Notes under the pieces: model-generated
Seen by the model: only the letters and a program-made list of their open reading frames with translations
The model's database searches: none
What the model was told of the DNA's origin: nothing
Position numbers and translations under genes: made by a program
Shown here: positions 9,001 through 45,088 of the stretch, piece after piece
How the letters are laid out: the number at the start of each line of letters is the position of its first letter
Position numbering within the stretch: the first letter of the stretch is position 1
DNA from: Macrostomum lignano
Lineage: Eukaryota
NCBI GenBank assembly: GCA_002269645.1
Contig: NIVC01000906.1
Coordinates: 186,001 to 250,000 of the forward strand
Direction of reading: 5' to 3'
DNA length: 64,000 nt

Positions 9001-12000
9001 GCTAAAAGGAATGCCTACGGCGCCAAAATTAGTGCCTGTGGCGCTAAAAGGAATGCCTACGGCGCCAAAATGAGTGCTTGTGGCGCCAAAATGAGTGCCT
9101 GTGGCGCCAAAAGGAATGCCTACGGCGCCAAAATGAGTGCCTGTGGCGCCAAAAGGAATGCCTACGGCGCCAAAATGAGTGCCTGTGGCGCCAAAAGGAA
9201 TGCCTACGGCGCCAAAATGAGTGCTTGCGGCGCTAAAGTGAGCGCTGACAACACTGATTCTCCAAATAATAAACATGTAGGAATTTTGTCATGTAAATGT
9301 ACATGTTGAATTCTTGGCTTTGTCCCCCCACCATAAAATCCAATGGCGACGCCCCTGGCAACAGTGAGTACTGAAGGCGAAAGTCAAAGCAGTTTGTATT
9401 ACCAGTGGTCAATGAGGGAAGTAAACTCTAAATGCTTTTTAGCCTAGTGGCTAGAGCGTCGGACTCACGACTGAAAGGTCGGGGGTTCGAATCCCGACCC
9501 AACTCGGAACAATTTGTGTCCTTAAGCAAGACACTTAACTCTGCATTGTTTCAGTTCACCCAGCTGAAAAATGGGTATCAGCTTTAGCAGGGGTAATAAA
9601 TTGAGGCTGTGTGGCGACCTCCCCGTCCTTGGACTGAACAGCCGTACGCAGCCTTCAGATGCACCGCGCAATAGCCCATTGAGACAGGTGTCATCAATCA
9701 ATTAATTTATTTATCTGCAACATAAATGTAAAATCTTAAGACCCCAATTAACCAACTTGCATGTACGTGTTGCTCGTGTATGCAGATCAGTTAAAATAAG
9801 ACTATTAAGTGAGCGATTATACGTCGGACTCTCAAAGTCACTCAGTTCGTTTTTCGAACGATTCACGACCGTGAGAGCCAACCCCAAGGCCCAGAGAGTG
9901 TGCACGGCTAACGATTAGAAACTCAGGGCTGTTGCACACTTTAAATGAGCCGCCGGTTGTGCGGTGATGTGGCCAAAAGGGGCTGCGCCAGGGTGACCAC
10001 AACCCTCTTGCGAACTTTAAAAAAATTGAAAATACATTAAAAAACGGACTCACCGAGTTCCCCAAGCCCTTATTGCCGTCGATGATGTACACCACAGTCT
10101 GGTGGTTAAATCCGAACAGCTGTCTCAGCAGCCGTTCCCGCAGCTTAGGATCAAAACAGTCGCCCGGTATCTCTAGGAACTGCACCCGGGTTCTCAATAT
10201 GGGATTCTTGACTCCAATCTCTAGCACACAGTTGTCAAGGCTGCCCCAGGCTGCACGCTCTTCGTCGCTCATCACTTCCTCAATAAACTCGCGCACCTGA
10301 TTCGATGTGCGGTGACGCTACAGTACAAATGATAAAATAGATGTAATAATGTTTAGATAGCAATTATTAATTAATTGTTAGTTCGAAGTAACATATCAGA
10401 TTTGAGAAGAGACACAGCCACGAAAGCCATCAAAAGCCATAGACACAGCCACAAAAGCCATAAACACAGCCACAAAAGCCATAGACAAAGCCACAAAAGC
10501 CATAGTCACAGCCACAAAAGCCATAGACAATAGCACAAAAGCCATAGAAAAAGCCACAAAAGCCATAGACAAAGCCACAAAAGCCATAGACACAGCCACA
10601 AAAGCCATAGACAAAGCCACAAAAGCCATAGACACAGCCACATAAGCCATAGACACAGCCACAAAAGCCATAGACACAGCCAAAAAAGCCATAGACAAAG
10701 CCACAAAAGCCATAGACACAGCCACAAAAGCCATAGACACAGCCACAAAAGCCATAGACACAGCCACAAAAGCCATAGACACAGCCACAAAAGCCATAGA
10801 CACAGCCTCAAAAGCCATAGAAACAGCCACAAAAGCCATAGAAAAAGCCACAAAAGCCATAGACACAGCCACAAAAGCCATAGACACAGCCACAAAAGCC
10901 ATAGACACAGCCACAAAAGCCATAGACACAGCCACAAAAGCCATAGACAAAGCCACAAAAGCCATAGACACAGCCAAAAAAGCCATAGACAAAGCCACAA
11001 AAGCCATAGACAAAGCCACAAAAGCCATAGACACAGCCACAAAAGCCATAGACACTAACACAAAAGCCACAGTCGAAAACTCACCAGCATTTGAGCCGGC
11101 TGTTGTGGGTCGCCCTTGATCTGTTCCAGCTCCAAAGGCCTCTCGGTGGTGCTTTTAGCAATTTTAACGTAGCCGGATTCGTCGTATTTCAAATGCACGA
11201 TTCCGTTGCACGGATGCTTCAGCATCGCGGCGCTGCTAGGCAAAATATCTGCGCCCAGGATCCCATTGATGACGGATGATTTACCGCTGCCTTTGCCGCC
11301 CAGCACCAGCAGTATTGGGTCGGTGCGCAGGACGCTCATGATGGTTTGCTCTTCGCTGTTCGACAGCCAAGCCTCTGTGCCGCGGTCCGTGGCGGACAGT
11401 TCGGCGAGTCCCGAAGCGCTGCTACTGCTGCTGCCAATCAGAAGCTCCTGGATGCCCTGACAAGCCCGCTTGAGCTCGTGATAAGTCTGCTTAACAATGC
11501 GTCTTGTGCTATAGAAATTTTTGAAATAATCGTGCAATTCGTTGATAGATTTCTCGTTGCTGTGGGGCGCCCATGCGCTGGACTGCTCCATCTCGGTCAT
11601 CTCGGGTACGAAGGCTTCACCTTCGGAGAGGTCTCCGTCAATGCTGCCTGCTGGCAATGTTAGAAGCTAGTTGCCATGAATAAGTTATAAAAATTTGTAC
11701 TTTTAGCTAGCACTTTGAGGCGCTCAACTTCAACATACCCGATCTACTGAGAGTAGTTGACGAGCTCAAAATGGCACCATCAGCAGTTCTAGATGTGTTC
11801 GACTGCTCTGCAGCAATCTGACCGTCGGTTCCACCTTCATCAGGAGCGTGAGCAGCTTCATCGCTAGCTTCGGTAGCTTGAGTTGGCGCCTCCTCAGATA
11901 CACGTACTTAAAATTCGGTGAAAGGCAACCATAAACATACTAATTAGTGCAATTTCAGTGTTAGCTAAGTTTCTTGATCTTCTGGCACGCCCAACTACAG

Positions 12001-12832
12001 ATAGTCAGTTTTACTATAATCTTTATATATCTCTCAATCCTTTTTTCTTTCCTTTTGTATCCTTACTCATCTAGCTGCTCTCCCTCTCTCCCCCTTCTCT
12101 CTCCCCTCCTCTCTCTCCCCTTTTCTCTCCCCTTCTCTCTCCCCCTCTCTCTCCCCTTCTCTCTCCCCTTCTCTCTCCCCTTCTCTCTCCCCTTCTCTCT
12201 CCCCTTCTCTCTCCCCTTCTCTCTCCCCTTCTCTTTCCCCTTCTCTTTCCCCTTCTCTCTCTCCTTCTCTCTCTCCTTCTCTCCATCTCACTGTCTTTCT
12301 CACCATCTCACCCCTGTCTTTTCATCTAATCTCACCCCCTGTTTTTCATCTAATCTCACCCCTGTCTCTCCCATCTCCCTCCCTTTCTCTTCATCTCACC
12401 CCTTTCTCTTTATCTCACTCCATTCTCTCCATCTCACTCCCGGTCTCTCCATCTCATTCCCGGTCTCTCCATCTCATTCCCGGTCTCTCCATCTCATTCC
12501 CGGTCTCTCCATCTCATTCCCGGTCTCTCCATCTCATTCCCGGTCTCTCCATCTCATTCCCGGACTCTCCATCTCACTCCCGGTCTCTCCATCTCACTCC
12601 CTTTCTCTCACTCCCCTTCTCTTTTTATGCGATTCAGTTTCTTAGACCAATCTGCCTCTTAGTTCAGATCTCTTGTCTATCATCTCTTTCGTGCTCCAGT
12701 GTACTATCTAACACTATTGCATTGGTTGGGCAATCAGGTTAGATTTTTTTGTGCTGAATCTATTTACTCACCATTTTCGTCGTGATCATCCGGTCCGATT
12801 GTAACAAATCCAGTCTGCTTGCTTAGATTCAT
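6021..12832 (-). CDS. Dynamin-like GTPase-helical-pseudokinase protein (DSTYK-like architecture), ~1077 aa
   Basis: Exons 12832-12772 (putative ATG exon), 11906-11739, 11650-11085, 10317-10054, 8350-6602, 6446-6021; all GT-AG and frame-consistent. G1 GGKGSGKSSVINGILG, G3-like EIPG, G4 FFVINKVD. C-terminal kinase-like region has hinge ..YNSSLQDFI and catalytic-loop-like PWSLTPKNL but no HRD or DFG. Confidence 0.75.
8815..9250. repeat. 21-bp minisatellite with two interleaved variants (intronic)
   Basis: GGCGCCAAAATGAGTGCCTGT and GGCGCTAAAAGGAATGCCTAC units. Confidence 0.93.
9440..9675 (+). mobile_element. tRNA-derived CORE-type SINE
   Basis: A box TAGCCTAGTGG, B box GGTTCGAATCC, then TGTGTCCTTAAGCAAGACACTTAACTCT...TCAGTTCACCCAGCTGAAAAATGGG matching the CORE domain pattern. 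A second copy lies inverted at 38025-38277. Confidence 0.85.
10407..11070. repeat. 21-bp minisatellite (~31 copies, intronic)
   Basis: AGCCACAAAAGCCATAGACAC repeated; starts about 15 bp from the splice donor at 11084. Confidence 0.97.
12075..12610. repeat. CT-rich 12-bp repeat followed by a 20-bp minisatellite
   Basis: CCCCTTCTCTCT (12080-12290) and CGGTCTCTCCATCTCATTCC (12420-12610). Confidence 0.92.
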
Positions 12833-13719
12833 TATTGGGCAATCAGAATCCCGGTAAATACTTGTAGAGTCATTCAAAATTGAGCGACTAAAAGGTCAGT
12901 CAAAAATAATTTGGAAAATATATTTATATGCAGGAGCGATATAGCTTCCAAGCTTAGGTTGAATTTGCAGAATCGTGTTTCGACCGGGGGGGGGGGGTAG
13001 TGGCTGGTGTCACTTGCTTCTCGCTGTCTGTCTTCTTACTGTGCATCTCTGCCCCGCCTGCGGTCTGTGCATTCAGCATTTGTCGGAGGGAGGACGGGGG
13101 GTTGGTTGCACACTTACTTGGGTTGCGCCCGAGCTAGAAGCAGCTTTTCGTAGAGAGCCACACGCAGCACTGAGAGGCACCGGGGGGGGGGGGGTAGGAA
13201 TAGGAACACTCACAGATGTACAAGTCATTCGTAAAACACATTCGTACCCTGGGCCTGTATATATAGGTATAGGAGATAAATATATGTGACTGGGCGCAGA
13301 TATAGATATTAACTGCGGGGCATATCTCGGATGAAATTACTGTAAATTTAATGTCCAATGTAGAAGTCAGTTAGTAGCTACAGCTGTGCAAACTCTTATC
13401 TATGCATTGTACATACAGGTAAATATAGTTTATAAATTTGAATTTTGGTACTATCCAACAGTATAATTATATTGATTAGGCTATAAGATAAACTTTAAGA
13501 CAATACAGTCCAATATGGACACTTATTGCACGACACTGTAAGCTGGGGCACCTCGCGTACATATGCAAGCTTTTGCCAAGGGATATGTATGATCGTAGAA
13601 GTATGGCCTACGGCTAAAGTTTACTCCTTGAGTCCTTAGTTACCCCCTGCAGATTGGGGCCATCATACAATAACTGAAAGTACATTAGTTACCGCTTTAA
13701 CAGCCAGAGCCACCCCCTC

Positions 13720-14085
13720 CGCTCCCCTTGGATCTCTACCCTCCAGAATCCGCCCCCTTGGATCTTTCCCTCCAGAATACGCCCCCTTGGATCTTTACCC
13801 TCTAGAATCCGCCCCCTTGGATCTTTACCCTCTAGAATTCGCCCCTTGGATCTCTACCCTCCAGAATCCGACCCCTTGGATCTTTCCCTCCAGAATCCGC
13901 CCCCTTGGATCTTTACCCTCGAGAATCCGCCCCTTAGATCTCTACCCTCCAGAATCCGACCCCTTGGATCTTTCCCTCCAGAATACGACCCCTTGGATCT
14001 TTACCCTCTAGAATCTGCCCCCTTGGATCTTTACCCTCTAGAATCTGCCCCCTTGGATCTTTACCCTCTAGAATCCGCCCCCCTC
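13720..14085. repeat. 30-bp minisatellite (~12 copies)
   Basis: GAATCCGCCCCCTTGGATCTTTACCCTCTA repeated. Confidence 0.93.
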
Positions 14086-14157
14086 AGCCGCAGCAAATTT
14101 TTGGTTGCGCTACTGAATATTTACGATTTACAAATTCAAGAATATGATGAGGGGTCG

Positions 14158-14310
14158 AGCTGAGAGGAGAGAAGAGAAAAGAGAGGAGGGGAGAGAGGAG
14201 AGGAGAGGAGAGGAGAGAAGAGAAGAGAGGAGAGAGAGGAGATCGAAGAGAAAAGAGAGGAGAGGAGAGAGGAGAGAAGAGAAGAGAGGAGGGAGACAGG
14301 AGAGAAGAGA
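14158..14310. repeat. GA-rich low-complexity tract
   Basis: (GAGAG/GAAGA)n. Confidence 0.9.
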
Positions 14311-14482: not shown

Positions 14483-15971
14483 GACATGACTAATTAATAA
14501 ATACAACTAAAAAACAAGTTAAAATGACATAATGTACACTAAACTAACAAAAGCACGAAAATGATTTGCGATATAATGGGAAATGCTATAACACGAAATG
14601 TTTTTAGTTAAATAAAAAGGAAGAAAGTATTGGCATAGTTTGGTTTATAATTTCTGCACATAAGTTAGTGTGATTACCTTTGAGACACGTGGCAATTATG
14701 CAAATTACGATGGAGATTCAAGCACTGAATTCACCGGCTGTTGGGTTCACCGGATTTTTAACTTTATTTTTAGGGCTTAAAAATATGCATAATCAATAGC
14801 GCAAGTAAAACTAGAGATGCGCCTAGATTTTTGGCTCTGCGCGTTGCCCCTGGACATCAGGAGGGCGATTTTTGTTATTTTTTGGGGGGTGAAACCGGCG
14901 GTGAACCCAATAAATCCTTCCAGAGAGCTGAAAACCTGTCATGCAATATTTCAAAGCAAAATATAGGCAGATTTCGACGTGCGCATAAAATTTTAGCGTT
15001 GCGCGTTGCTCCTGAACTGCAGGAGAACGTTTTTTGTTAAATTCCGGTGTTGAATGACTGCCGCTGAACTCCGCGGTGAACGAAATTAAGTGCGTTTCCC
15101 GAGTCGAAAAATAGTAAATTTTCCTATTAAAAAAGTTACAAAGTAAAGTTTTATCACTTTCATCAGCATTTTTGCACTCACTTTTGTGTTGTTGACTGTT
15201 AAGCTATTTATTTTAATGCAAAGCGAAAACATTAAAAAATATTTCGAACTGCGAGTCTTTATTGCGCAACGTTGCAGCAGGCAGTTACAGCGCACTTGCG
15301 CATAAAAAATACATTATACGAGCGTATTTATACGCCGTGTGGTATTTTTGTGGCCATACTTAATAATGAAGCCTTTTATGCTGTTTTACTTCCTATATTT
15401 TTAGATTTATTTTTCAATTACGTCTTGAAACATGCAGTCAAAGTGTTAATATCAGTATAGGCAATAAAATAAAATTGGCATTTCTTGGCTTGATGCTTTT
15501 TACAACTTGTTAAAACCTCTATTTTAATATTTCTTCTCTTCTAATAAGTCAAATTATAAACATAATATCTATTTAAGATTCCATAGTGCTTTTCCATTAA
15601 GTATAAATTCAATTAAATCAGGCAGGCACTAAGTATACTTTTATAAAATAATAACTATAACATGCAGTAAAAATATTGACTATACTAGCCTATTTAATTA
15701 CTTGTAATTTTATGTAATATTACTAGCCAATAAATATTTTTTATATTTGATTTCATTGTAATTATAAAAAAATGTAAATAATTCTGTATATTTATAACAT
15801 TGTTGACTCATAAAATTCTTTCTTGTTTTTTCTCCTAACCATAATTAATATTTCAAAAAATATACATCAAGAATTATTAATTTTTCTTGATTTGTAAATA
15901 AAAATATTACTCTGCAATTTCCAATATTTTTCATGTATTTTATGTAAAATGCCCAATTTCATGTGTTTTTT

Positions 15972-16400
15972 GTGTTTCCATCAGTTTAGCTTGGGCTAAC
16001 TAGAAACTGCAGACTGACAGAGTGCATTTCTTTCTCCGGGATATTGCTTCTTTCTAAGTTAAAGAGACCAATATGCTCATTAGGAGTAGCTTTATGCCCA
16101 GAAGCACAGTACGCACAATAAATTGTGTTTTTTGTGTTTCCATCAGTTTAGCCTGTTATTGGGCTATCTAGAAACTGAAGACTGACAGAATGCATTTCTT
16201 TCTCCGGGATATTAATTGCTTCTTTCTAAGTTAAAGAGATCAATATGCTCATTAGGAGTAGCTTTATGCCCAGAAGCACAGTACGCACAATAAATTGTGT
16301 TTTTTGTGTTTCCATCAGTTTAGCCTGTTATTGGGCTATCTAGAAACTGAAGACTGACAGAATGTATTCCTTTTTCAGGGATATTGCTTCTTTCCAAGTT
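15972..16400. repeat. ~170-180-bp tandem subrepeats at the inner end of the left TIR
   Basis: CATCAGTTTAGC...CACAATAAATTGTGTTTTTTGTGTTTC about 2.5 times; mirrored at 19270-19500 and 20903-21085. Confidence 0.9.
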
Positions 16401-16584
16401 AAAGAGACGAATCTGCTTCATACCAACGTCTTTATCGCTAAAATCACAGTAACACAATAAATTCGGAACCCACTTTCCCTTTTTACTCGCGTTTATTAAC
16501 GATGCGTACACTGTTTTCGAAGCGCAAGGTCCTCTACCTGCGAATGCTGCTTTTTGTCGGCGTTTGAGTTGAGGCTACTGATGT

Positions 16585-16857
16585 TCAAGAAGCGACAGCT
16601 CTAGGACCAGATGGACAAGATGTCTATACGCCACGTTTCCTACTGCGAAAGTGAAAAAATACGAGGATTTGATCAAGAAGTTTGATGTCTACTGCCAGCC
16701 TCTCTCCAACGAGACATTTGAAAGCTATCAGCTGCGCACCAGAATGCAAGGAGAAGCGGAGGACTTCGACCAGTTCATGGGTTCTCTACGCCAGCTCGTG
16801 AAGCGCTGCAACTACAGCAAACCTGACAACGACGAGATCAAGAACAGCATCTTCGAT
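16585..16857 (+). pseudogene. Ty3/Gypsy gag fragment
   Basis: ALGPDGQDVY (frameshift) KKYEDLIKKFDVYCQPLSNETFESYQLRTRMQGEAEDFDQFMGSLRQLVKRCNY, a typical Gypsy gag capsid motif pattern. Confidence 0.8.
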
Positions 16858-16873
16858 ATCTTCGATAGCTTAC

Positions 16874-17170
16874 AGCCTGGCCTTCTGGCTGTTGGGGTGA
16901 AGCGCGAGAAGCGCGGGCCCGCTCACGATACGCCCGAAGGTTCTTGGCCTGGTCCAGCGCGCGCTGGATCAGGCCGGACCTCCGGGTGCTCCTGGCGGGT
17001 CTGCGATTGCGATTTCCGGTTTCAGCAGCGCGAACTGCCCTACCAGGCATAGGATCGGCCGTTTGCCTCGGCTTCTTTGCCGGAGGAGCCTGGGCCCCAG
17101 TTCCGGTTTCGGAAGCCTTGGCATTCTTGGCTTCATCAGCTTTCCGCTCCTCGCAACGGAGGATGGTCAG
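16874..17170 (-). other. Orphan exon-like fragment (297 nt, phase 0-0) inside the TIR element
   Basis: Acceptor tgactcag| at 17171, donor |gtaagc at 16873. Open frame LTILRCEERKADEAK...PEGQA, basic and low-complexity. Confidence 0.45.
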
Positions 17171-17515
17171 CTGAGTCAGACTGTAAAGGCTTTGGCAGTT
17201 GAATGCTCTGTTTATTTGGGTCAATCGAGTGATTGAAAAGGACTTAAAATAATTGCATTTCTGGTTTCGTGTATTTATAGATGAAATTGGGGTTTCCGGA
17301 AAGTTCTGGAAAAACGTGCATCGTTATAACAAAACTAAGTTGTATGTACGTATTGCTCAAATAGTGACTAAGTGTTACAGTACAAGAATTCATGTAAATT
17401 AATAATTAACTATGCATAATCGGTGTAGAAATAATATTGTGAACTTGATGGTAATTTCAGGAAAAGCGTAGAATATTTAAAATTACCATATCGGGAAATT
17501 TCTATTATTCATACG

Positions 17516-18389
17516 CTAAAGAAAGTTCGCGAAGGTCACTACAAGACCAATATGGATTGTGGACTTAGGCGGCAAGTGCTCAGCCCAGTCATTAGAGAGC
17601 CCTAGGATCACCGTAGCCCCCCTCTCCTTGCGGGAAGTGGCGTGGTGTAGGAGCCCGTTGACCTCAAGGTCAGGGTGCAGCTTTAGCAATACTCGTATTT
17701 GCCTAAGCTGATCTCCGGACTTAATGGCACTGCCGGCCGGGATCCAGACGCGAAAGCGCTGGCGAAGACGAGCTTGCCGAGCTTCTTGGGCCAGTTCAGC
17801 TTTGGCAGAAGCTCGCGTAGACTGCGGCTGCTCTCCTCCGAGCTGCACCAGATGAAGATGCAGCCGTCGGTCTTGGCGGACTTGACCACGCTCACAGGGC
17901 GGCCCGCCAGGAGCTGGTCGATGAGCGCAGCATCGATGGTGCGCCAGGCACTGTCGAGCTCGTCGGCCGTGAGGTCTTGCTCTTCCCCGAAGACGATGAC
18001 CGCCGGTTGGAGCTTGACCTTTGAGGCGTAATTAGTGCGGCGGTTCCCCAGCTCACCAGCGGGGGTTGTATCCTTGGGGGCAGGGGTTACTGTGGCTCCT
18101 TTCGGGCCAACAGCAGCCTCGTCCTCCCTAGGTTCCCCCTCCGCCGGTGGTCGGCCCGCAGTCGCCGTCGCCGCTCGTTGCGGCGTTGGTTGCGGGCGCG
18201 TCGGGCTTCAGCGGAGGGCCCGGTTGCGCGTGCGGGCATGTCACCGGCCGAGCCGGCGGCAAGCCCATCTGCCCCCAGTGGGGCGGCGCTCGTGCCAGAG
18301 TCACCGGCCGGAGTTGCCGGGGCCCCGGCTTCAGCGGGGTTGAAAGAGGCGGATAACGCCATAGCTGAAAGCGGGAAGGATGAGATGAG
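17516..18389 (-). pseudogene. Non-LTR retrotransposon ORF1 (DUF4780-like) fragment with two frameshifts
   Basis: ..NYASKVK..AWRTIDAAL..CIFIWCSSEESSRSLRELLPKLNW..RFRVWIPAGS..LLKLHPDLEV..GATVILGLS..HIGLVVTF matches the DUF4780 pattern as recalled. Confidence 0.6.
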
Positions 18390-18995
18390 GCACGGTGCTG
18401 ATGAGATGAGACGCTTCGCTTCGCTGAAGGCCATCTCGCATTTTGCGTCCCAGTTCCATGGCGTGTCCTTGCGCAGGAGCGCTGTTAGCGGCTCGGCGAC
18501 GTGAGACAGGTTCTTGATGTAGAACTGGAAGAACTTTGCAAAGCCAAGGAATGAGGCTAACTTTGCCGTATTTGTGGGTGCCTTGAGTCCCGATACGGAC
18601 CCGGTGTGCGACTGGAGAGGTTGAATTCCCGCTGCGCTGACGCGGTGCCCAACGAACTCGATCTCCGACGCCTTGAAGGTTGCACTTCTTGAGGTTGACG
18701 GTTACTCGATGCTGCAGCAGCTTGTCCAGTACCTGAAGTACGCGACTTTCGTGCTCAGCTTCAGTACCGGCGTGAACGGCGATGTCGTCTTGATAGTGAA
18801 CGACGCCTCTGATGCCTTGGAGGATCTTGCCGACGACCTTCTGGAAGGCCGCCGGATCCGAGCTGATGCCGAACGGCATGCGTCTGAAACGGTAGAGGCC
18901 GAATTCGGTGTGGAAGCAGGTCAGATTCTTGGCGTCATCGTGCAGAGGCAGCTGTAGATACGACTGGTTGAGGTTGATTCGTGAGAAAAACTTCG
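18390..18995 (-). pseudogene. Ty3/Gypsy reverse transcriptase fragment with one frameshift
   Basis: FSRINLNQSYLQLPL..FHTEFGLYRFRRMPFGISSDPAAFQ..HYQDDIAV..KKC/FKASEIEFVGH..SFLGFAKFF..EPLTALLRKDTPWNW..AFSEAKRLISSAPCL. Confidence 0.93.
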
Positions 18996-19501
18996 AATTG
19001 TAAACCTCAAATATATTACTAATTTAAAATTTTAAAACACGTTTCCATTCTTTTGAATTAGAATAGCAGGTATGTTCAGAGCTAAAATAATTCTGGTTTA
19101 ACAATTTCATGCCTTACTTTATTTCATTCACAACTCTCGCTGCACTACTCATAGTAAAGTAGTAAAGATGTATCAATGTTGCAACAACATTGCCAATTTT
19201 GACAATGGCACGACAAAAAATCTCTTGTGACAACATTGATGTCAACAATTCAGCAACACAAGGAATATCCGTAAAAAGGAATACATTCTGTCAGTATTCA
19301 GTTTCTAGATAGCCCAATAACAGGCTAAACTGATGGAAACACAAAAACACAATTTATTGTGCGTACTGTGCTTCTGGGCATAAAGCTACTCCTAATGAGC
19401 ATATTGATCTCTTTAACTTAGAAAGAAGCAATTAATATCCCGGAGAAAGAAATGCATTCTGTCAGTCTTCAGTTTCTAGATAGCCCAATAACAGGCTAAA
19501 C

Positions 19502-20902
19502 CACAGAATATAGACAGAATGCCCGATCGGCTGTCGCGGGATATTTGGAAATTAATATGCAAACAAACTACTTTTGTGGTGAAGCGGAGCAGTAGTTATG
19601 AAAATTCGATATGCACATATATATATTTATAATATATGTAGACTCTGCGTATGATTCTATAAACTTAGACACTGCTTCAGAATTAAAAAATAACAGGTTT
19701 GGCAGTGCCCAAATTGGAATAAAACCGTAGACGTTGTCACCAATCATTTATTTGAAAGAAATAACATATTTGAAACATTTTAATTATTATTATTAACAAT
19801 TCACCAATTTACTCCAATTTGTATTCGCTGCTCCAGTTCAAATTACATTGTAAACTTTCCCCAATCAATTAAATTCCTCAATCAGCGTTCAGTCGCCTCA
19901 GCTTTCTCTGCACTGGTACAAGTGCAGTCCCTCTTCCGCTTTTCCTCTTCTGCGCCAGAATTCGCTGACTGTTGCACCAATGGTGGAGCCTCAGATTGGT
20001 GTACAGCGTTGCTAAACCAATAGTACAGCGTTCGCTGTGCTCATCAGAATGAGTTCGTATGAGACTTCGAGCTGAACTGAGAAACGCAGCTCTAACACTG
20101 GCCCTAACACGCGGCTCGTGGAATTTATCTGACGGCGCTTCCTGAAAGCTCGCTTCCATTTCTGCAACAGCCGCCACCACTGCATCACTGGGCACTACTA
20201 GGCTGGCTTCTTCGTAGCTTTTCAGGTGAATAAAAGTCTTGCCTTCCACGGAGGCTGAAGTGAGGTCGCAGCGACAGTTCTCACAGTGGGCATCAGTCTG
20301 ACCCCAGGCTCATGTCTCTGGTCAGGACACACGTACATGCTGTCGGGAAAATGGTGGCTGCACACGACAGCGTTCTACCACGTCGCTTCGTTTTTCTTGC
20401 CCAAGAGGTCTGATCGGAAAATGCGCCGAGCCCAATCTTCACACCTACAGTAGTTAGGTTTCAGTGAATGACTGTGTGGCAATAGCAGGCAAGTCATGCA
20501 TGTACATGAACATACCTTTCACGGTTTGCTGGGAAACGATGAAATCTCGTTTGTGCAGGACATTTGTTTGCGTAATTCTGGCAGCCATAAGCAGCGCATT
20601 GCCTTCTTGATGCTGTCATAATGTTACAGTTGTCTCTGTTAATGCCTTCGTTGCTGCCAATCACTGCCTTATTAATGTCAATAGCAGCAGCCGCTGCCAC
20701 GGAATATACTGTATATTCTATGGCATCGGCTGCTGCTACTCGCAGTCTCAGTCGTCTATGACAGAACCTTTCCGAGCCGCATACGAGTAAGTATAAGTGA
20801 CTACTATCTTCATTCACCACAAAAGTAGCTAAATATGCAAATACTTTTTGCGGCAGATTTTTCTGCGAGAGGGCTGATCGGCCATTCTGTCTATCTTCTG
20901 TG
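19502..20902 (-). mobile_element. Internally deleted P-element-like (THAP) DNA transposon, 1401 bp
   Basis: TIRs CACAGAA(T/G)ATAGACAGAATG(C/G)CCGATC (25/27 identical); 8-bp TSD GGCTAAAC at 19494-19501 and 20903-20910. Spliced THAP domain CAAYGC..FHRFP..W..VVCSHHF with an in-frame TAG, joined to a transposase C-terminus (CENC..LVVPS..YTNLRLHH). Confidence 0.85.
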
Positions 20903-23900
20903 GGCTAAACTGATGGAAACACAAAAAACACAATTTATTGTGCGTACTGTGCTTCTGGGCATAAAGCTACTCCTAATGAGCATATTGGTCTCTTTAACTT
21001 AGAAAGAAGCAATATCCCGGAGAAAGAAATGCACTCTGTCAGTCTGCAGTTTCTAGTTAGCCCAAGCTAAACTGATGGAAACACAAAAAACACATGAAAT
21101 TGGGCATTTTACATAAAATACATGAAAAATATTGGAAATTGCAGAGTAATATTTTTATTTACAAATCAAGAAAAATTAATAATTCTTGATGTATATTTTT
21201 TGAAATATTAATTATGGTTAGGAGAAAAAACAAGAAAGAATTTTATGAGTCAACAATGTTATAAATATACAGAATTATTTACATTTTTTTATAATTACAA
21301 TGAAATCAAATATAAAAAATATTTATTGGCTAGTAATATTACATAAAATTACAAGTAATTAAATAGGCTAGTATAGTCAATATTTTTACTGCATGTTATA
21401 GTTATTATTTTATAAAAGTATACTTAGTGCCTGCCTGATTTAATTGAATTTATACTTAATGGAAAAGCACTATGGAATCTTAAATAGATATTATGTTTAT
21501 AATTTGACTTATTAGAAGAGAAGAAATATTAAAATAGAGGTTTTAACAAGTTGTAAAAAGCATCAAGCCAAGAAATGCCAATTTTATTTTATTGCCTATA
21601 CTGATATTAACACTTTGACTGCATGTTTCAAGACGTAATTGAAAAATAAATCTAAAAATATAGGAAGTAAAACAGCATAAAAGGCTTCATTATTAAGTAT
21701 GGCCACAAAAATACCACACGGCGTATAAATACGCTCGTATAATGTATTTTTTATGCGCAAGTGCGCTGTAACTGCCTGCTGCAACGTTGCGCAATAAAGA
21801 CTCGCAGTTCGAAATATTTTTTAATGTTTTCGCTTTGCATTAAAATAAATAGCTTAACAGTCAACAACACAAAAGTGAGTGCAAAAATGCTGATGAAAGT
21901 GATAAAACTTTACTTTGTAACTTTTTTAATAGGAAAATTTACTATTTTTCGACTCGGGAAACGCACTTAATTTCGTTCACCGCGGAGTTCAGCGGCAGTC
22001 ATTCAACACCGGAATTTAACAAAAAACATTCTCCTGCAGTTCAGGAGCAACGCGCAACGCTAAAATTTTATGCGCACGTCGAAATCTGCCTATATTTTGC
22101 TTTGAAATATTGCATGACAGGTTTTCAGCTCTCTGGAAGGATTTATTGGGTTCACCGCCGGTTTCACCCCCCAAAAAATAACAAAAATCGCCCTCCTGAT
22201 GTCCAGGGGCAACGCGCAGAGCCAAAAATCTAGGCGCATCTCTAGTTTTACTTGCGCTATTGATTATGCATATTTTTAAGCCCTAAAAATAAAGTTAAAA
22301 ATCCGGTGAACCCAACAGCCGGTGAATTCAGTAGTTAGTCCAAGCAAGCTCCTCTTCTCCACCTGCGGTCTGCGGACTCCAATGGCTGAAAAAAACCACA
22401 TTAGCTTACCTAGATTCTAGATATTGGCCTAATGACTGCTTTTTTGGCTAGGCCTTAAGGCCTAAGGGCATAAAGCTTAGCCATGGCTCCTAGGCCTATC
22501 CTATTAAAAATGAACACCAAACCAAATAAGTATTTTTGGTAGGCAGTAGGCTTAGGCCCTACGCTTAGGAATATGGCCTATATAGCTAAGGACCATGTCC
22601 TATCCTGTGTAAGATTCTGAAATTTAGTAAAAAAAGTAGGCCTATAAGCCTAGGCATACTTATACATATAGTTATATTATTTTATTTTTAATGCTAGGTC
22701 TAATTTTGTAGCTATATAATTATAAGAGTAATAAATAATGCCATGGTGATATATGATGCAATACAATCAAAATTTTGTTCAATATTAATTTTTTATATAG
22801 GCCCTATCAGTCCAACAATTTCAATGGCTAGGGCCTAATATTTAAGTTTCTATTGATAGATAAGACAAACATTTGTCTTAAGACTAGGCCTAGGTCATAT
22901 TTTTGATCAAAACTAAATTGCATAATTAGGCCTAATGTAGGCCCTAATATTAAAGGTTTCAATATCAGGCCTAAGCCTAATAGATTAAATGGTTTTTACA
23001 AAAGGTTAAATTGGATAGACCCATAATATAGGATTGAATTAGCCCTTAGACTTTTAATGGCCTATATTTTTTAATTTATTAAGATATTTTATCTTTTATA
23101 AAGTACCTAGGCTTTATCTTTGATTTAAAACTATGTTAATATATGAATATCTAATTAATAGCCTAATAATAAACATTTACTAAATAAAAGTTTAGGGCTA
23201 GTAATTGGATAGTTATACAACTAATAGACTTAAGATACCATTGAAACCTTTGTTAGCATTTTGTTCTGCTATCATAGGGGCCAGATTGATTCATGTACTA
23301 TATACTAATATATATATAGATATTAAGCATCCAATATTAATAGATAAGCTGGCAGAGATTCTCAAGCCTAAAATTTTTAGAAAGGTCTAAGTTTGGGCTA
23401 TGGCCTAAGGAAAATAAGCCTGTCCTATATAAAGACAGCCTAATTGCAATGCTTATAGCATTATGCCTTCTATTAATAATATATAGGGCCTAAATAAGTA
23501 AAAGTTGCCTAAGCCTAAGCATTCATAGCCTAAGCATTCATAAATAAAAAGCTTTATATTCTTAACACTAAAAAGGCAAGATAGGTATATCTTACTATAA
23601 TATAGATTTTGCCTAGAAATAACAATGCCTAGCAAAATATCCATGAGTTGAGAGGGCCATGATCATTATCAAAGGATAGATAATAGCCATGAAGAATTAT
23701 TGCAAATTAGGATAATCCACCTGGCACCTTTTCCCATAAAAGATCATAGAAGATACTTATATGCTAGAAAATTTGAACTAGTAACAATAAAGTTATATAT
23801 AGTTAACATGATCTTCTTATTCACATAATGTTTAAAATAATTATAATAAAAACTTGGCATTAGTTAGCATAAAATTATGACTTAGTTACTTTTTATTCTG

Positions 23901-24640: not shown

Positions 24641-27600
24641 ATGCAATCCCAACCATTGCCCACTGCCGGCCCCTCTCCTGTGCCAGCGGAGCCGCCCAAG
24701 GACACCAGCCAAGACTCCGCAGCCATCCCTGAGGACGAATGGATTCGCACTGGGGCGCAGTACACAGCTATGCAGCGCCTGTCCATGACCATGCTGGGTC
24801 AGGGACCCCTGCCGAACCACCTGGCCATTATCATGGACGGCAATAGGCGATTCGCCAGATGTCACGGCCTGCAGAAATCGCAGGGCCATCTGCGCGGCTT
24901 TCAAAAAGTTGGCGAAGTGCTGGAATGGTGCCGCGACCTGGGCATTAACGAAGTGACCGTCTACGCTTTTAGCATCGAGAATTTCAACAGGAGCGCCGAG
25001 GAGGTGGCCGGCCTCTTGCAGCTGGCCAGGCAGAAATTCGACCGACTATTGCAGGAGTTAGACCGGCTCCGGGCCTACGGGGTCTGCGTCCGGGTGCTGG
25101 GCAATCTGCAACTGCTGCCTGCCGATCTGAGGGCCGCTGCAGCCAGGGTCATGCAGGCCACCAGGTCTGCGGCCTGGCGTCATTCTGGTTTGGGAGATTG
25201 TGGCTTGGGGTCACTCTGGGTTGGGAGATTGTGGCTTGGGGTCACTCTGGGTTGGGAGATTGTAGCTTGGGGTCATTCTGGGTTGGGAGATTGTAGCTTG
25301 GGGTCACTCTGGGTTTGGATATTGTAGCTTGGGGTCATTCTGGGTTGGGAGATTGTGGCTTAGGGTCACTCTGGGTTGGGAGATTGTAGCTTGGGGTCAT
25401 TCTCGGTTGGGAGATTGTAGCTTGGGGTCATTCTGGGTTGGGAGATTGTAGCTTGGGGTCATTCTGGGTTGGGAGATTGTAGCTTGGGGTCATTCTAGGT
25501 TGGGAGATTGTAGCTTGGGGTCATACTGGGTTGGGAGATTGTAGCTTGGGGTCATTCTGGGTTGGGAGATTGTAGCTTGGGGTCACTCTGGGTTTGGATA
25601 TTGTAGCTTGGGGTCATTCTGGGTTGGGAGATTGTGGCTTAGGGTCACTCTGGGTTGGGAGATTGTAGCTTGGGGTCATTCTGGGTTGGGAGATTGTAGC
25701 TTGGGGTCATTCTGGGTTGGGAGATTGTAGCTTGGGGTCATTCTGGGTTGGGAGATTGTGGCTTAGGGTCACTCTGGGTTGGGAGATTGTAGCTTGGGGT
25801 CATTCTGGGTTGGGAGATTGTAGCTTGGGGTCATTCTAGGTTGGGAGATTGTAGCTTGGGGTCATACTGGGTTGGGAGATTGTAGCTTGGGGTCATTCTG
25901 GGTTGGGAGATTGTAGCTTGGGGTCATTCTGGGTTGGGAGATTGTAGCTTGGGGTCATTCTGGGTTGGGAGATTGTAGCTTGGGGTCATTCTGGGTTGGG
26001 AGATTGTAGCTTGGGGTCATTCTGGTTTTGGGAGATTGTAGCTTGGGGTCCTTCTGGGTTGGGAGATTGTGGCTTGGGGTCACTCTGGGTTGGGAGATTG
26101 TAGCTTGGGGTCATTCTGGGTTGGGAGATTGTAGCTTGGGGTCACTCTGGGTTTGGATATTGTAGCTTGGGGTCATTCTGGGTTGGGAGATTGTAGCTTG
26201 GGGTCATACTGGGTTGGGAGATTGTGGCTTGGGGTCACTCTGGGTTGGGAGATTGTAGCTTGGGGTCATTCTGGGTTGGGAGATTGTAGCTTGGGGTCAC
26301 TCTGGGTTTGGATATTGTAGCTTGGGGTCATTCTGGGTTGGGAGATTGTAGCTTGGGGTCATACTGGGTTGGGAGATTGTAGCTTGGGGTCATTCTGGGT
26401 TGGGAGATTGTAGCTTGGGGTCATTCTGGGTTGGGAGATTGTAGCTTGGGGTCATTCTGGGTTGGGAGATTGTAGCTTGGGGTCATTCTGGGTTGGGAGA
26501 TTGTAGCTTGGGGTCACTCTGGGTTGGGAGATTGTAGCTTGGGGTCATTCTGGGTTGGGAGATTGTAGCTTAGGGTCACTCTGGGTTGGGAGATTTTAGC
26601 TTGGGGTCATTCTGGGTTGGGAGATTGTAGCTTAGGGTCACTCTGGGTTGGGAGATTGTAGCTTGGGGTCATTCTGGGTTGGGAGATTGTAGCTTGGGGT
26701 CATTCTAGGTTGGGAGATTGTAGCTTGGGGTCATACTGGGTTGGGAGATTGTAGCTTGGGGTCATTCTGGGTTGGGAGATTGTAGCTTGGGGTCATTCTA
26801 GGTTGGGAGATTGTAGCTTGGGGTCATACTGGGTTGGGAGATTGTAGCTTGGGGTCATTCTGGGTTGGGAGATTGTAGCTTAGGGTCATTCTGGGTTGGG
26901 AGATTGTGGCTTAGGATCACTCTGGGTTGGGAGATTGTAGCTTGGGGTCATTCTGGGTTGGGAGATTGTAGCTTGGGGTCATTCTGGGTTGGGAGATTTT
27001 AGCTTGGGGTCATTCTGGGTTGGGAGATTGTAGCTTAGGGTCACTCTGGGTTGGGAGATTGTGGCTTGGGGTCATTCTGGGTTGGGAGATTGTAGCTTAG
27101 GGTCACTCTGGGTTGGGAGATTGTGGCTTGGGGTCATTCTGGGTTGGGAGATTGTAGCTTGGGGTCATTCTGGGTTGGGAGATTGTAGCTTAGGGTCACT
27201 CTGGGTTGGGAGATTGTGGCTTGGGGTCACTCTGGGTTGGGAGATTGTAGCTTGGGGTCACTCTGGGTTGAGAGATTGTAGCTTGGGGTCACTCTGGGTT
27301 GGGAGATTGTAGCTTGGGGTCACTCTGGGTTGAGAGATTGTAGCTTGGGGTCACTCTGGGTTGGGAGATTGTGGCTTGGGGTCATTCTGAGTTGGAAGTT
27401 TGTCGTTTGGGAGATTGAGTTAGGATATTCTGGGTTTGGTGATCTTGGTTTGGGAGGTTGTGGGTTGGGAGATTGTGTGTTTCTTCAGTTGAAACAGTTC
27501 AAGAATGACACATAGAGTGGAGAAATTCAAACGAATCAGGTCTGCAATGTTTACTTCAGCGGCAGAATTAGAAGTCAGCACTCATCAAGAATACTGCTAT

Positions 27601-34952: not shown

Positions 34953-36639
34953 TCAGCGAGAGTCAACGGTCCACACTTTGACCAGGCAGTCGTCGCCAAC
35001 ACTGACAAACAGGTTGTCAATTGTTGGATGCCATTTCACATCGTTGACATCTTCGCAGTGCGCGTCGGCGACTCGTTCGACGAGATCCCAGCAGCCGGAG
35101 TCGGTGTTGGCTGTCCACAGGCAGATGGAGTTGTCCTGGGAAGCTGACAAGAGCCAGTCCCGCGACGGGTGCCTGCGGATTGGGGCATGAGAATGAGCAG
35201 TGTGTTTGTTGCTGCAGAGATAGCTGTAGATAGAGTAGATAACTGCAGATAGAGAGTAGATAACTGTAGATAGAGTAGGTAACTGTAGATAGGGAGTAGA
35301 TAACTGTAGATAGAGAGGAGATAACTGTAGATCTAGGACGTAGATAATTGTAGATAAAGAGTAGATAACTGTAGATCTAGGAAGTAGATAACTGTAGATC
35401 TAGGAAGTAGATAACTGTAGATAGAGAGTAGATAACTGTAGATAGAGAGTAGATAACTGTAGATAGGAAGTAGATAACTGTAGATAGGAAGTAGATAACT
35501 GTAGATGGAGAGTAGATAACTGTAGATGGAGAGTAGATAACTGTAGATGAAGAGTAGATAACTGTAGATAGGGAGTAGATAACTGCAGATAGAGAGCAGA
35601 TAACTGTAGATAGAGAGTAGATAACTGTAGATAGATAGTAGATAACTGTAGATGGAGAGTAGATAACTGTAGATAGAGAGTAGATAACTGTAGATAGGAA
35701 GTAGATAACTGTAGATGGAGAGTAGATAACTGTAGATGGAGAGTAGATAACTGTAGATGGAGAGTAGATAACTGTAGATGGAGAGTAGATAACTGTAGAT
35801 AGGGAGTAGATAACTGCAGATAGAGAGCAGATAACTGTAGATAGAGAGTAGATAACTGTAGATAGAGAGTAGATAACTGTAGATGGAGAGTAGATAACTG
35901 TAGATGGAGAGTAGATAACTGTAGATAGGGAGTAGATAACTGCAGATAGAGAGCAGATAACTGTAGATAGGGAGTAGATAACTGCAGATAGAGAGCAGAT
36001 AACTGTAGATAGAGAGTAGATAACTGTAGATAGAGAGTAGATAACTGTAGATAGGGAGTAGATAACTGTAGATAGAGAGTAGATAACTGTAGATAGGGAG
36101 TAGATAACTGTAGATAGAGAGTAGATAACTGTAGATATGGAGTAGACAGCCGAGGAGAGGCTAGACAGTAGACACTTGCATAGAGAATAGATACCTGCAA
36201 AGAGAGTAGAAATCTGCAGAGAGACCAGAGACCTATAGACGCTAGATATCCAGCGTAAGAAAAGATACCCGCAGAATGAACAGACAGATACCAATTCAGT
36301 ATTCTTTACAGGAAATAACCATAAACTAAAAGTAGCCAAACCCACCAGCTGCAAGAGAAAATCGGCAGCTCGTGTCCGCCCGTCAGCGTTGCCTCGCACC
36401 GCCAGGTTGTCGGACCATCCGTAGGCGCGCCAGCCGCTGACCAGACGCGCAGAGTTCGATCTGCGCTACACGAAGCCAGCCGCTTGCCGTCCGGGCTGAA
36501 GGCCGCCCGCCACACCGTGGACTCGTGGCCGGACAGGGTGGCGAAGCTGCACCAGTCGTCGCCGTCCTCTCGGTGTAGCTTCAGCGTGTCATCGTAGCTG
36601 GCCGTGGCCAGGATCTGGCGGTAAGGGGGCGGACAGGTG

Positions 36640-36684
<45 letters not shown>

Positions 36685-36685
36685 C

Positions 36686-36735
<50 letters not shown>

Positions 36736-37103
36736 TAAGACAGATAGACAGACAGACAGACAGACAGACACAGAGACAGACAGACACTAAAACAGAAAAA
36801 GCAGATGCTCACCTCGGACTGTGGATGCCAGACCACGCATTTGATGTCCTGACTGTGCGGCTGAGTGACGCTCAGGCACTGAAAGTCCGAGTCGTCGTCC
36901 ACTGCAAAAAATTGAAAAGATTAGCTTAGCTAATAAATAATCTGATAAGTACATTCGATAGGGCAAATGCGCGTCTGTTTGTTTGGTTGTCTGTCTGCCT
37001 GTCTGTCTTAGTGTCTGTCTGTCTGCCTGTGTGTCTGTCTGCCTGTCTGTCTTAGTGTCTGTCTGCCTGTGTGTCTGTCTGTCTGTCTGTCTGCCTGCCT
37101 GCC

Positions 37104-37153
<50 letters not shown>

Positions 37154-44108: not shown

Positions 44109-44828
44109 TCACAGAAAGATGGAGCGCAAATCCAAGTCGGAACGCAGCTGCTCCATCAAGTCCTCAATTTCAACAGCTCGGACATCCTCATCGCTAAATC
44201 CCAACTGCCGCAGGCGGCGGCTGATTCTGCCTGGGATGTTGCGATTCAACATATTGCGCCAGCGATCTTTAATCTGGACATTGGTGCGAGCGGCGTGGCT
44301 CAGCAGCCGGTTGCGAATGTTTACCCAGTCAGATCCGTAGCGCGCGTGCCCGATGTACAGCAGAAACGAGTCGCGCTCGTTCCAAGGCCGGCGCTGCCTG
44401 ACTGAGGAGGCGGAGCTGGTGAATCGGCCGCGCATCTCCTGCGACAGGTCCAGGACTGGGCGACGGCTGGCGCCGGGTCTGGCGGCCGCTGCTGACGAGG
44501 CATTTGGTGAGCTCTGGACAACCTGGACATCGTCGGGATCTGAGCTGATGCCATCCGAGCTGATGCTGCTACTGCTGCTGCTGTTGTTGTTGTTGTTGTT
44601 ACCTGAACCTGCTGGCTTGTCTGAGTTGCTACGATTGGTGCTATTGCCTTTGTTCTTGCTGCTATTTCTGTCATTGGCACTGTTGTCAATAACAACTACG
44701 GGTGGATTGCTGTTAATTGCAGTTTCCTGCGGCTGCTGCTGCTGCTGCTCGGGCTGCAATGAGATTAGCAACCAGTGTGACATTTGGGCATCAGGCAGAC
44801 AGACACAGACAGACAGAGGCAAGTAAAA

Positions 44829-44861
<33 letters not shown>

Positions 44862-44919
44862 AGAGACAGACAGACAGACAGACAGTATAGATAAACAGAC
44901 ATACAGACAGAAGAGACAA

Positions 44920-44976
<57 letters not shown>

Positions 44977-45009: not shown

Positions 45010-45088
<79 letters not shown>

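What the first reader, a model, noticed from the sequence alone, without database searches (positions are those of the whole stretch)
14724..22332. Transposase-less element with 1.65-kb inverted arms carrying a mosaic of unrelated retroelement pieces
Seen: near-identical arms (only scattered mismatches noticed) with ~170-bp inner tandem subrepeats and recurring GGTGAAC/GTTCACC motifs. They enclose 2.9 kb made of Gypsy gag (+), an orphan exon (-), a DUF4780-like LINE ORF1 (-) and Gypsy RT (-). None of these has its own LTR or ends. Knowledge: Pack-MULE/Pack-TIR elements capture gene fragments, and Foldback elements have long, internally repetitive TIRs. Inference: a foldback-like vehicle that collects fragments of several retrotransposon classes. 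Read-through would fold into a long hairpin and could feed siRNA/piRNA silencing of those families, i.e. a mobile TE trap.
Basis: partly seen in the sequence, partly recalled or inferred. Interest (0 to 1): 0.85.

Follow-up and report, generated by a model that had tools for sequence, protein, structure and literature searches.

The report
Foldback-like inverted repeat around dead retroelements
In a flatworm (Macrostomum) genome, two almost identical 1.66-kb inverted arms built like the ends of a known "foldback" transposon enclose 2.9 kb of broken retroelement pieces. Nothing shows that the structure moves, collects fragments or silences anything, so it is a fairly ordinary repeat structure.

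Summary
The inverted arms are real: 14724-16153 pairs with 20903-22332 (1430 bp, 1 mismatch) and 16146-16389 pairs with 19260-19501. With that insert removed the arms are 1666 and 1664 bp and differ at 6 positions.

Each arm has end motifs (TTCACCGG twice), a diverged subterminal duplication, an AT-rich unique domain and an inner 172-bp tandem array. This is the published foldback architecture (Tetris, Galileo).

The 2.9-kb middle holds three dead fragments, not four: a Ty3/Gypsy gag piece (+), a LINE ORF1 piece (-) that includes the "orphan exon", and a Ty3/Gypsy RT piece (-).

Points against a proven mobile element: no target-site duplication, no second copy in the window, and no host genome reachable for a copy-number or empty-site test.

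The "TE trap" idea has no support. The cargo would sit in the single-stranded loop of any hairpin, and both neighbouring genes transcribe away from the element.

Best reading: a non-autonomous foldback-type element or its relic (about 0.45). Main rival: a local inverted duplication (about 0.28). Interest is low to moderate.

The parts
14724..16389 (+). Left arm of the inverted repeat (1666 bp)
   Evidence: It pairs with 22332-20911 plus 19501-19260. There are 6 differences in total, 5 of them in the innermost 90 bp.
14724..14753 (+). Outer terminus ACTGAATTCACCGGCTGTTGGGTTCACCGG, with TTCACCGG twice 16 bp apart
   Evidence: It occurs only at the two arm ends in the window. The reverse motif CGGTGAA recurs at 14899 and 15074.
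14818..15089 (+). Diverged subterminal duplication: two copies 162-175 bp apart, about 78% alike, each ending in CCG(C)GGTGAAC
   Evidence: families D4, D6; local alignment z = 16 against shuffles.
15962..16463 (+). Inner 172-bp tandem array, about 2.9 units. The last 77 bp (16387-16463) are diverged and lie outside the inverted homology.
16464..19259 (.). Middle segment (2.8 kb, 53% GC against 31-37% in the arms) made of retroelement debris. 16464-16617 and 19024-19259 are unassigned.
16618..16872 (+). Ty3/Gypsy gag fragment, corresponding to about residues 60-140 of gag-pol polyproteins. It has no start codon and no LTR.
   Evidence: 631 relatives, best E = 2.6e-14; the seven long relatives tested all have RT and RNase H domains, six of them also integrase. 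Pfam alone gave no match.
16868..18127 (-). LINE ORF1 fragment (5' part of a LINE, no ORF2), frame-shifted.
   Evidence: It is 65% identical at protein level to ORF1 of metagenomic LINE L001, whose ORF2 has endonuclease and RT domains. The DUF4780 match of that ORF1 is only weak (E = 0.008).
17171..17542 (-). 372-bp AT-rich extra segment inside the LINE ORF1, bounded by GT...AG and absent from L001
18390..19023 (-). Ty3/Gypsy-type reverse transcriptase fragment (middle of RT to connection domain). It has one frameshift near 18690 and is truncated at both ends.
   Evidence: RVT_1 1.1e-14; Ty3 RT, PDB 7q5b and 4ol8, E = 3.6e-27 and 5.5e-26.
19260..19501 (-). Inner part of the right arm (172-bp units). 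It carries one copy of the 8-bp duplication GGCTAAAC at 19494-19501.
19502..20902 (-). Nested non-autonomous P-like DNA transposon. Inverted ends are at 19502-19531 and 20873-20902 (CACAGAAKATAGACAGAATG...). THAP exons are at 20619-20516 and 20444 to about 20290, separated by a 71-bp GT-AG intron, with an in-frame TAG. The catalytic part is deleted.
   Evidence: (I15); (THAP 1e-12, 49 bits against a 23.9-bit cut-off).
20903..22332 (-). Outer part of the right arm (1430 bp, 1 mismatch to the left arm). Its first 8 bp (20903-20910) are the second copy of the duplication GGCTAAAC.

Best explanation
The structure is most likely a non-autonomous foldback-type DNA transposon, or the relic of one, in a Macrostomum (flatworm) genome.

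Shown:
- Two 1.66-kb terminal inverted repeats, each with the same layout. The outer end has a doubled TTCACCGG motif. The same motif appears in reverse orientation 175 and 350 bp further in, inside a diverged subterminal duplication. Then come an 860-bp AT-rich unique domain and an inner array of 172-bp tandem repeats.
- A non-coding 2.8-kb middle domain made of old fragments of a Ty3/Gypsy gag, a LINE ORF1 and a Ty3/Gypsy RT.
- A P-like non-autonomous transposon that later inserted into the tandem array of the right arm and made an 8-bp duplication.

Inferred:
- The end motifs are binding sites for a transposase supplied in trans by an autonomous relative elsewhere in the genome.
- The arms stay nearly identical either because the copy is young or through gene conversion between the arms.
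- The retroelement debris is a passive passenger. It is either old genomic DNA bracketed by two foldback ends or a decayed middle domain, not an actively assembled collection.

No silencing function is shown or needed.
For: - Arms of 1666 and 1664 bp with 6 differences.
- Homology stops sharply at both outer ends, with no residual similarity beyond them.
- The CGGTGAA/TTCACCG motif is concentrated at the termini: 8 of 10 window occurrences lie in the outer 350 bp of the arms, starting 7 bp from the end.
- The subterminal duplication is significant (z = 16).
- There is an inner 172-bp array.
- No protein homologues were found for any arm reading frame, and there are no RNA genes.
- The layout matches Tetris: TIRs up to 1735 bp made of a flanking domain plus about 220-bp tandem repeats, with a variable non-coding middle.
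- Galileo also has long, internally repetitive TIRs, and some of its copies lack matching TSDs.
- The P-like insertion with its own duplication in only one arm shows that the arms are two physically distinct DNA segments.
Against: - No target-site duplication of any length from 4 to 12 bp flanks the ends. The best candidate is a 6-mer that needs an 8-bp offset, which is expected by chance.
- No second copy, solo arm or stray 172-bp unit lies anywhere else in 56 kb of a repeat-rich window.
- Exact-match scans of public metagenomes with the terminus and the 172-bp unit found nothing.
- The termini match no recognised superfamily signature. Tc1, CACTA, hAT, P and piggyBac were checked by eye.
- The left arm runs in phase into a further diverged 172-bp unit, as expected if it lies in its native context. 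That also fits a local duplication.
Confidence: 0.45

Rival explanations
1. This is a local, recent inverted segmental duplication and not a mobile element. About 1.67 kb of native intergenic DNA (the left arm) was copied in reverse orientation 2.9 kb downstream, by template switching or fold-back repair. The retroelement debris is simply the native DNA between the two copies.
For: - There is no TSD.
- The arm is single-copy within the window and no copies were found elsewhere.
- The arms are 99.6-99.9% identical, while the enclosed retroelement pieces are old and broken.
- The left arm continues in phase into a diverged extra repeat unit, as a native array would. The right arm stops abruptly within a unit.
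Against: - The outer boundary coincides with the start of a cluster of end-like motifs and a subterminal duplication. An arbitrary breakpoint would not be expected there.
- The overall layout is the textbook foldback TIR layout.
- No microhomology was seen at the two junctions this model predicts (19259/19260 and 22332/22333; checked by eye).
Confidence: 0.28
2. The arms are two separate copies of one repeat family that landed about 3 kb apart in opposite orientations and do not form a unit. They could be solo foldback TIRs, a long non-autonomous element, or the LTRs of two convergent truncated Ty3/Gypsy copies.
For: - The flanks do not match as a TSD, as expected for independent insertions.
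- In Galileo, solo TIRs were the largest structural class, 64 of 170 copies.
- Reading inward from each arm, the first coding fragment is in sense orientation: gag from the left arm and RT from the right arm. This loosely resembles two facing 5' LTRs.
Against: - The two copies end at different internal points, and there is no similarity beyond them.
- No TGG-type primer-binding site follows the left arm. Only about 155 bp separate the arm from a gag fragment that already lacks about 60 N-terminal residues.
- The near-identity of the arms would need two almost simultaneous insions followed by large deletions, while the internal parts look old.
- LTRs with inverted subterminal motifs would be unusual.
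Confidence: 0.12
3. This is an assembly artefact: a false inverted join of two haplotypes or homeologues, or a chimeric long read, in a redundant neopolyploid assembly.
For: - The published M. lignano assembly is described as still quite redundant, and the species is a hidden tetraploid.
- The arms are almost identical.
Against: - A missed-adapter palindrome would have no 2.9-kb unique loop, and both arms would be identical, including the insertion.
- Here one arm carries a transposon with a clean 8-bp duplication and the other does not.
- The arms end at different internal points.
- The structure lies in the middle of a gap-free 64-kb window, with genes on both sides.
Confidence: 0.05
4. One reading: the element is a mobile 'TE trap'. 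Its read-through transcript folds into a hairpin and feeds siRNA or piRNA silencing of the Gypsy and LINE families it carries.
For: - M. lignano has an active piRNA pathway, with 436 clusters of median length 9.7 kb made of transposon fragments.
- The locus is 7.6 kb of transposon fragments and could in principle be one such source.
Against: - In a hairpin only the arms are double-stranded. The retroelement pieces are in the loop, so Dicer products would not target them.
- Both neighbouring genes transcribe away from the locus.
- The cargo is three fragments of two classes, no more than ordinary intergenic debris.
- There is no evidence of mobility.
- No small-RNA data could be consulted.
Confidence: 0.05

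Closest known systems
Tetris (foldback transposon of Drosophila virilis; PMC4079207)
   Same: Long TIRs (up to 1735 bp there, 1666 bp here) built from an outer unique flanking domain plus an inner array of tandem repeats (about 220 bp there, 172 bp here). A middle domain of variable content with no transposase. Non-autonomous.
   Different: Structurally complete Tetris copies have 8-10-bp TSDs, and the family has many copies and satellite-like expansions. Here there is no TSD and only one instance could be seen. There is no sequence similarity, and the host phylum is different.
Galileo (foldback-like member of the P superfamily, Drosophila; PMC3573991, PMC4168063)
   Same: Long, internally repetitive TIRs that vary in length. 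Many two-TIR copies lack the transposase. Some copies have non-matching flanks.
   Different: Galileo copies without matching TSDs have divergent, chimeric TIRs. Here the arms are nearly identical. Galileo has 7-bp TSDs and a P-type transposase in full copies. No partner is known here, and the nested P-like element has unrelated ends.
Drosophila FB elements and FB-flanked composite transposons (FB-NOF, Ising's TE); from my own knowledge
   Same: Two foldback ends can bracket unrelated DNA and carry it along, which would explain retroelement debris between the arms.
   Different: FB arms are made almost entirely of short (10-31 bp) tandem repeats and give 9-bp TSDs. Neither feature is seen here.
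Pack-MULE / Pack-TIR elements (from my own knowledge)
   Same: TIRs enclosing captured, non-transposase DNA.
   Different: Pack-MULEs carry host gene fragments with exon-intron structure and have 9-10-bp TSDs and many copies. Here the content is transposon debris, there is no TSD, and no capture junctions can be recognised.
Mu killer of maize and animal hairpin-RNA (hpRNA) loci (from my own knowledge)
   Same: A natural inverted duplication whose transcript would form a long double-stranded RNA.
   Different: In Mu killer the silenced transposon sequence is itself the stem. Here the retroelement pieces are in the loop, so only the arm family could be targeted. No transcription is shown.
P element / THAP9-type transposons (for the nested insertion 19502-20902)
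   Same: 8-bp target duplication, about 30-bp terminal inverted repeats, and an N-terminal THAP DNA-binding domain (Pfam 1e-12).
   Different: Only 1.4 kb long. The catalytic domain is deleted and the THAP domain contains an in-frame stop, so it is non-autonomous. The C-terminal reading frame matched nothing.

Membership tests
Foldback-type TIR transposon (FB / Tetris / Galileo-like) | Very long terminal inverted repeats that make up most of the element | tested here: met
   1666 and 1664 bp with 6 differences. The arms are 3.3 kb of the 6.2 kb that remain once the nested insertion is removed.
Foldback-type TIR transposon (FB / Tetris / Galileo-like) | TIRs that are internally repetitive (tandem subrepeats) | tested here: met
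   172-bp array of 2.4-2.9 units at the inner end, plus a diverged subterminal duplication.
Foldback-type TIR transposon (FB / Tetris / Galileo-like) | Target-site duplication flanking the element (7-10 bp) | tested here: not met
   No matching flanks for k = 4-12 with end offsets of +/-12 bp, apart from a chance-level 6-mer.
Foldback-type TIR transposon (FB / Tetris / Galileo-like) | Multiple copies in the genome sharing the same termini | not testable with these tools
   None elsewhere in the window. Host genomic DNA is absent from the reachable collections.
Foldback-type TIR transposon (FB / Tetris / Galileo-like) | An autonomous partner that encodes the transposase | not testable with these tools
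   No transposase lies in the arms or middle. The genome could not be searched.
Pack-MULE / Pack-TIR | Captured host gene fragments between the TIRs | tested here: not met
   The content is Ty3/Gypsy gag, LINE ORF1 and Ty3/Gypsy RT fragments. The 'orphan exon' is part of the LINE ORF1.
LTR retrotransposon (arms as LTRs) | Direct terminal repeats, with a primer-binding site next to the 5' LTR | tested here: not met
   The repeats are inverted. There is no TGG-type primer-binding site in the 155 bp after the left arm.
DIRS-like retroelement (inverted terminal repeats) | Tyrosine recombinase plus RT in one orientation between the inverted repeats | tested here: not met
   No recombinase. gag and RT lie on opposite strands. 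The gag relatives carry integrase, so they are Ty3/Gypsy.
P superfamily (nested element 19502-20902 only) | 8-bp TSD, about 31-bp TIRs, THAP domain | tested here: met
   GGCTAAAC duplicated. 30-bp ends with 3 mismatches. THAP at 1e-12 after removing a 71-bp GT-AG intron.
P superfamily (nested element 19502-20902 only) | P-type catalytic (RNase H-like, GTP-binding) transposase domain | tested here: not met
   No match for the remaining reading frame. The element is internally deleted, so non-autonomous.
Small-RNA source locus (hpRNA or piRNA cluster) | Small RNAs that map to the locus; a transcript spanning both arms | not testable with these tools
   No expression or small-RNA data are available here. 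The neighbouring genes point away from the locus.

The most novel reading that the evidence does not exclude
The arms belong to an undescribed flatworm family of foldback transposons. Its copies carry retroelement fragments and are transcribed into precursors that feed piRNA or siRNA production, making it a mobile small-RNA source locus.
Probability: 0.05. Interest if true: 0.7.

Novelty: new member of a known kind. Interest (0 to 1): 0.25.

Why it matters
If the arm proves to be multi-copy, this would be a first description of a foldback-type long-TIR element in a free-living flatworm. No paper in the searched library links foldback elements to Platyhelminthes.

Long, near-identical inverted repeats are also hot spots for inversions and for assembly errors, which matters in a neopolyploid genome that is hard to assemble.

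It would not change how transposon silencing is understood unless small-RNA data show that the locus is a source. If the arm is single-copy, the structure is just a local inverted duplication in an intergenic junkyard.

Tried and rejected
1. Looking for other arm copies through spurious reading frames. A chimeric query of five arm ORFs found no homologue.
2. Exact-match scans of JGI metagenome contigs with the 24-nt terminus and with a 28-nt stretch of the 172-bp unit.
3. Fetching allelic or homeologous loci for an empty-site test through the RT ORF and the DHDDS exon. Neither is on record. The closest DHDDS proteins are UniRef entries of M. lignano with no contigs held.
4. nhmmer searches of the arm, the middle, the P-like element and both flanks against the rest of the window. 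Nothing was found.
5. TSD scan with end offsets. Only chance-level matches were found.
6. Weaker inverted or direct homology beyond the arm ends. None was found.
7. Arms as LTRs (no primer-binding site, wrong orientation), DIRS (no recombinase) or Penelope (the RT is Ty3-like). All rejected.
8. Superfamily signatures at the termini (Tc1 CAGT/TA, CACTA, hAT, piggyBac, P), checked by eye. None fits.
9. A relationship between the outer subterminal repeat and the inner 172-bp unit, as seen in Tetris, or between the arm and the nested P-like element. None was found.
10. Rfam and tRNA scans of the window. Nothing was found.
11. An argument that the boundary of high identity between 172-bp units coincides with the end of the arm homology, which would imply long-term concerted evolution. 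I dropped it because divergence already starts about 20 bp inside the arm.
12. Supplementary transposon libraries of M. lignano papers. None is held as text.
Full report
**Observation**

The window holds one outstanding inverted repeat. Positions 14724-16153 pair with 20903-22332 over 1430 bp with a single mismatch, and 16146-16389 pairs with 19260-19501 over 244 bp at 98%. No other large inverted repeat exists in the 64 kb apart from microsatellite arrays.

The two homology blocks overlap by 8 bp on the left arm. On the right arm they are separated by 1401 bp (19502-20902). That segment is flanked by a perfect 8-bp direct duplication, GGCTAAAC, at 19494-19501 and 20903-20910. It ends in about 30-bp inverted repeats (CACAGAAKATAGACAGAATG...) that occur nowhere else in the window.

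On the minus strand the segment carries a two-exon remnant. After removal of a 71-bp GT-AG intron it gives a THAP domain at E = 1e-12, above Pfam's cut-off, with an in-frame stop codon. The rest of its reading frame matches nothing. It is therefore an internally deleted, non-autonomous P-like transposon nested in the right arm.

With the insertion and one duplicated copy removed, the arms are 1666 and 1664 bp and differ at 6 positions, 5 of them in the innermost 90 bp.

**Anatomy of an arm**

- The outer 30 bp read ACTGAATTCACCGGCTGTTGGGTTCACCGG, with TTCACCGG twice.
- The reverse motif (CCG(C)GGTGAAC) recurs 175 and 350 bp further in, at the end of each copy of a diverged subterminal duplication (about 78% identity, z = 16 against shuffles).
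- Counting both strands, 8 of the 10 CGGTGAA sites in the whole window lie in the outer 350 bp of the two arms.
- Next comes about 860 bp of AT-rich unique sequence (31% GC). It has no protein homologue and no RNA family match.
- Last comes an array of 172-bp tandem repeats at 15962-16463.
- On the left the array continues in phase for 77 diverged bases beyond the inverted homology. On the right the homology stops inside a unit.
- No similarity, inverted or direct, continues beyond either end of the arms.

**The middle (16464-19259, 53% GC)**

- *gag fragment.* A gag-like fragment lies on the plus strand at about 16618-16872. Pfam does not recognise it. An exhaustive search found 631 relatives. 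The fragment aligns near the N-terminus of the seven long ones tested (from about residue 35 to residue 205, depending on the protein). All seven carry RT and RNase H domains, and six also carry integrase (zinc-binding and core), in that order. This is the Ty3/Gypsy architecture.
- *LINE fragment.* On the minus strand, 18127 down to about 16868 is a frame-shifted fragment of a LINE ORF1. It is 65% identical to ORF1 of a metagenomic element (L001) whose ORF2 has AP-endonuclease and RT domains. The DUF4780 match of that ORF1 is weak (E = 0.008). It is separated from the rest by a 372-bp AT-rich, GT...AG-bounded segment that L001 lacks.
- *RT fragment.* Also on the minus strand, 19023 down to about 18390 is an RT fragment (RVT_1 1e-14). 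Its best solved relative is the Ty3 RT (3.6e-27).
- *What this adds up to.* The cargo is three end-less fragments of two classes. The LINE piece keeps its 5' part and lacks its 3' part, the opposite of a fresh LINE insertion. All three pieces are decayed, while the arms are 99.6-99.9% identical. The debris therefore predates the last duplication or homogenisation of the arms, which argues against piece-by-piece collection.

**Host and surroundings**

The DHDDS exon at 24641 is 97% identical to two Macrostomum lignano UniRef proteins. A LINE-antisense stretch is 90% identical to another M. lignano entry. The window therefore comes from M. lignano or a close relative or homeologue.

The element lies in a 13-kb interval rich in microsatellites. 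On the left is a dynamin-family gene on the minus strand (Dynamin_N), and on the right is DHDDS on the plus strand. Both transcribe away from the element.

**What could not be tested**

The decisive tests are copy number of the arm, an empty site, and small RNAs. All need the host genome or its libraries.

M. lignano DNA is not in the reachable collections. Arm reading frames found nothing. Window ORFs are not on record. Both metagenome scans were negative. The M. lignano proteins found have no contigs attached.

**Interpretation**

The arm layout is that of published foldback transposons. Tetris has TIRs of up to 1735 bp made of a flanking domain, about 220-bp tandem repeats and an inner domain, around a variable non-coding middle. 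Galileo shows the same dynamics, and some of its copies lack matching TSDs.

Three features make a foldback-type non-autonomous element, or a pair of its ends bracketing old debris, the best single explanation (about 0.45):
- the homology boundary coincides with a cluster of end-like motifs;
- there is a subterminal duplication;
- there is an inner tandem array.

It is not proven. There is no TSD and no second copy was seen.

The rivals rank as follows:
- *Local inverted duplication (about 0.28).* It explains the missing TSD, the single-copy status and the native-looking continuation of the left array. It does not explain why the breakpoint sits at an end-like motif cluster.
- *Two independent insertions of one repeat, including an LTR reading (about 0.12).* It is disfavoured by the lack of a primer-binding site and by the different inner ends.
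- *Assembly artefact (about 0.05).* It is unlikely because one arm carries a clean transposon insertion that the other lacks, and because the loop is 2.9 kb of unique sequence.

**The "TE trap" idea**

M. lignano does have piRNA clusters built from transposon fragments, so the locus could in principle be a source. The proposed hairpin route does not work for the cargo, though. Only the arms would be double-stranded and the retroelement pieces would form the loop. In the classic precedent (Mu killer, from my own knowledge) the silenced sequence is the stem. No neighbouring gene reads into the locus.

I rate this reading at about 0.05.

**Verdict**

This is a real, well-defined foldback-like inverted repeat with a nested P-like transposon. 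At best it is a new member of a known kind. Its mobility and any function remain untested. Interest is low to moderate.

Noticed in passing
It has an 8-bp duplication (GGCTAAAC), about 30-bp inverted ends, and a THAP domain split by a 71-bp GT-AG intron with an in-frame TAG. The catalytic region is deleted. Its insertion in only one arm shows that the arms are separate DNA segments and that a P-type transposase was active after the inverted repeat formed.
   Followed up: yes
window 17171-17542 (- strand): A 372-bp AT-rich segment bounded by GT...AG interrupts the LINE ORF1 fragment exactly where the related element L001 is continuous. It could be an intron-like acquisition or a small insertion. 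No TSD or inverted ends were noticed.
   Followed up: partly
locus L001 (JGI metagenome 3300038379, 4148 bp): A LINE with an intact ORF1 and the start of an ORF2 (endonuclease plus RT), about 80% identical in DNA to the window's ORF1 fragment. That environmental sample therefore contains DNA of a Macrostomum-like animal or a closely related LINE family.
   Followed up: partly
window 10396-14310, 35377-37350, 41344-43049, 44109-45681, 48994-50459, 50999-51869, 57061-57790, 60244-61314, 62883-63554: The window is packed with minisatellite and microsatellite arrays (periods 12-59 bp in the one stretch scanned, 12084-14310). They produce long spurious open reading frames on both strands, some directly next to or inside gene regions.
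   Followed up: no
window 22333-23500 and 55001-55500: AT-rich stretches that are unusually dense in GGCCTA / TAGGCC / AAGCCT motifs. The first starts exactly at the right end of the inverted repeat. No alignable similarity links the two stretches.
   Followed up: partly
window 24641-25327: The DHDDS first exon is only 97% identical to the M. lignano UniRef proteins. The window may therefore represent the other subgenome (homeologue), another line, or a sibling species.
   Followed up: no
UniRef A0A1I8FTS7 (P0002): The C-terminus of this M. lignano 'GYF_2 domain-containing protein' gene model is the antisense translation of a LINE ORF1. This is a likely annotation artefact in the public proteome.
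   Followed up: no
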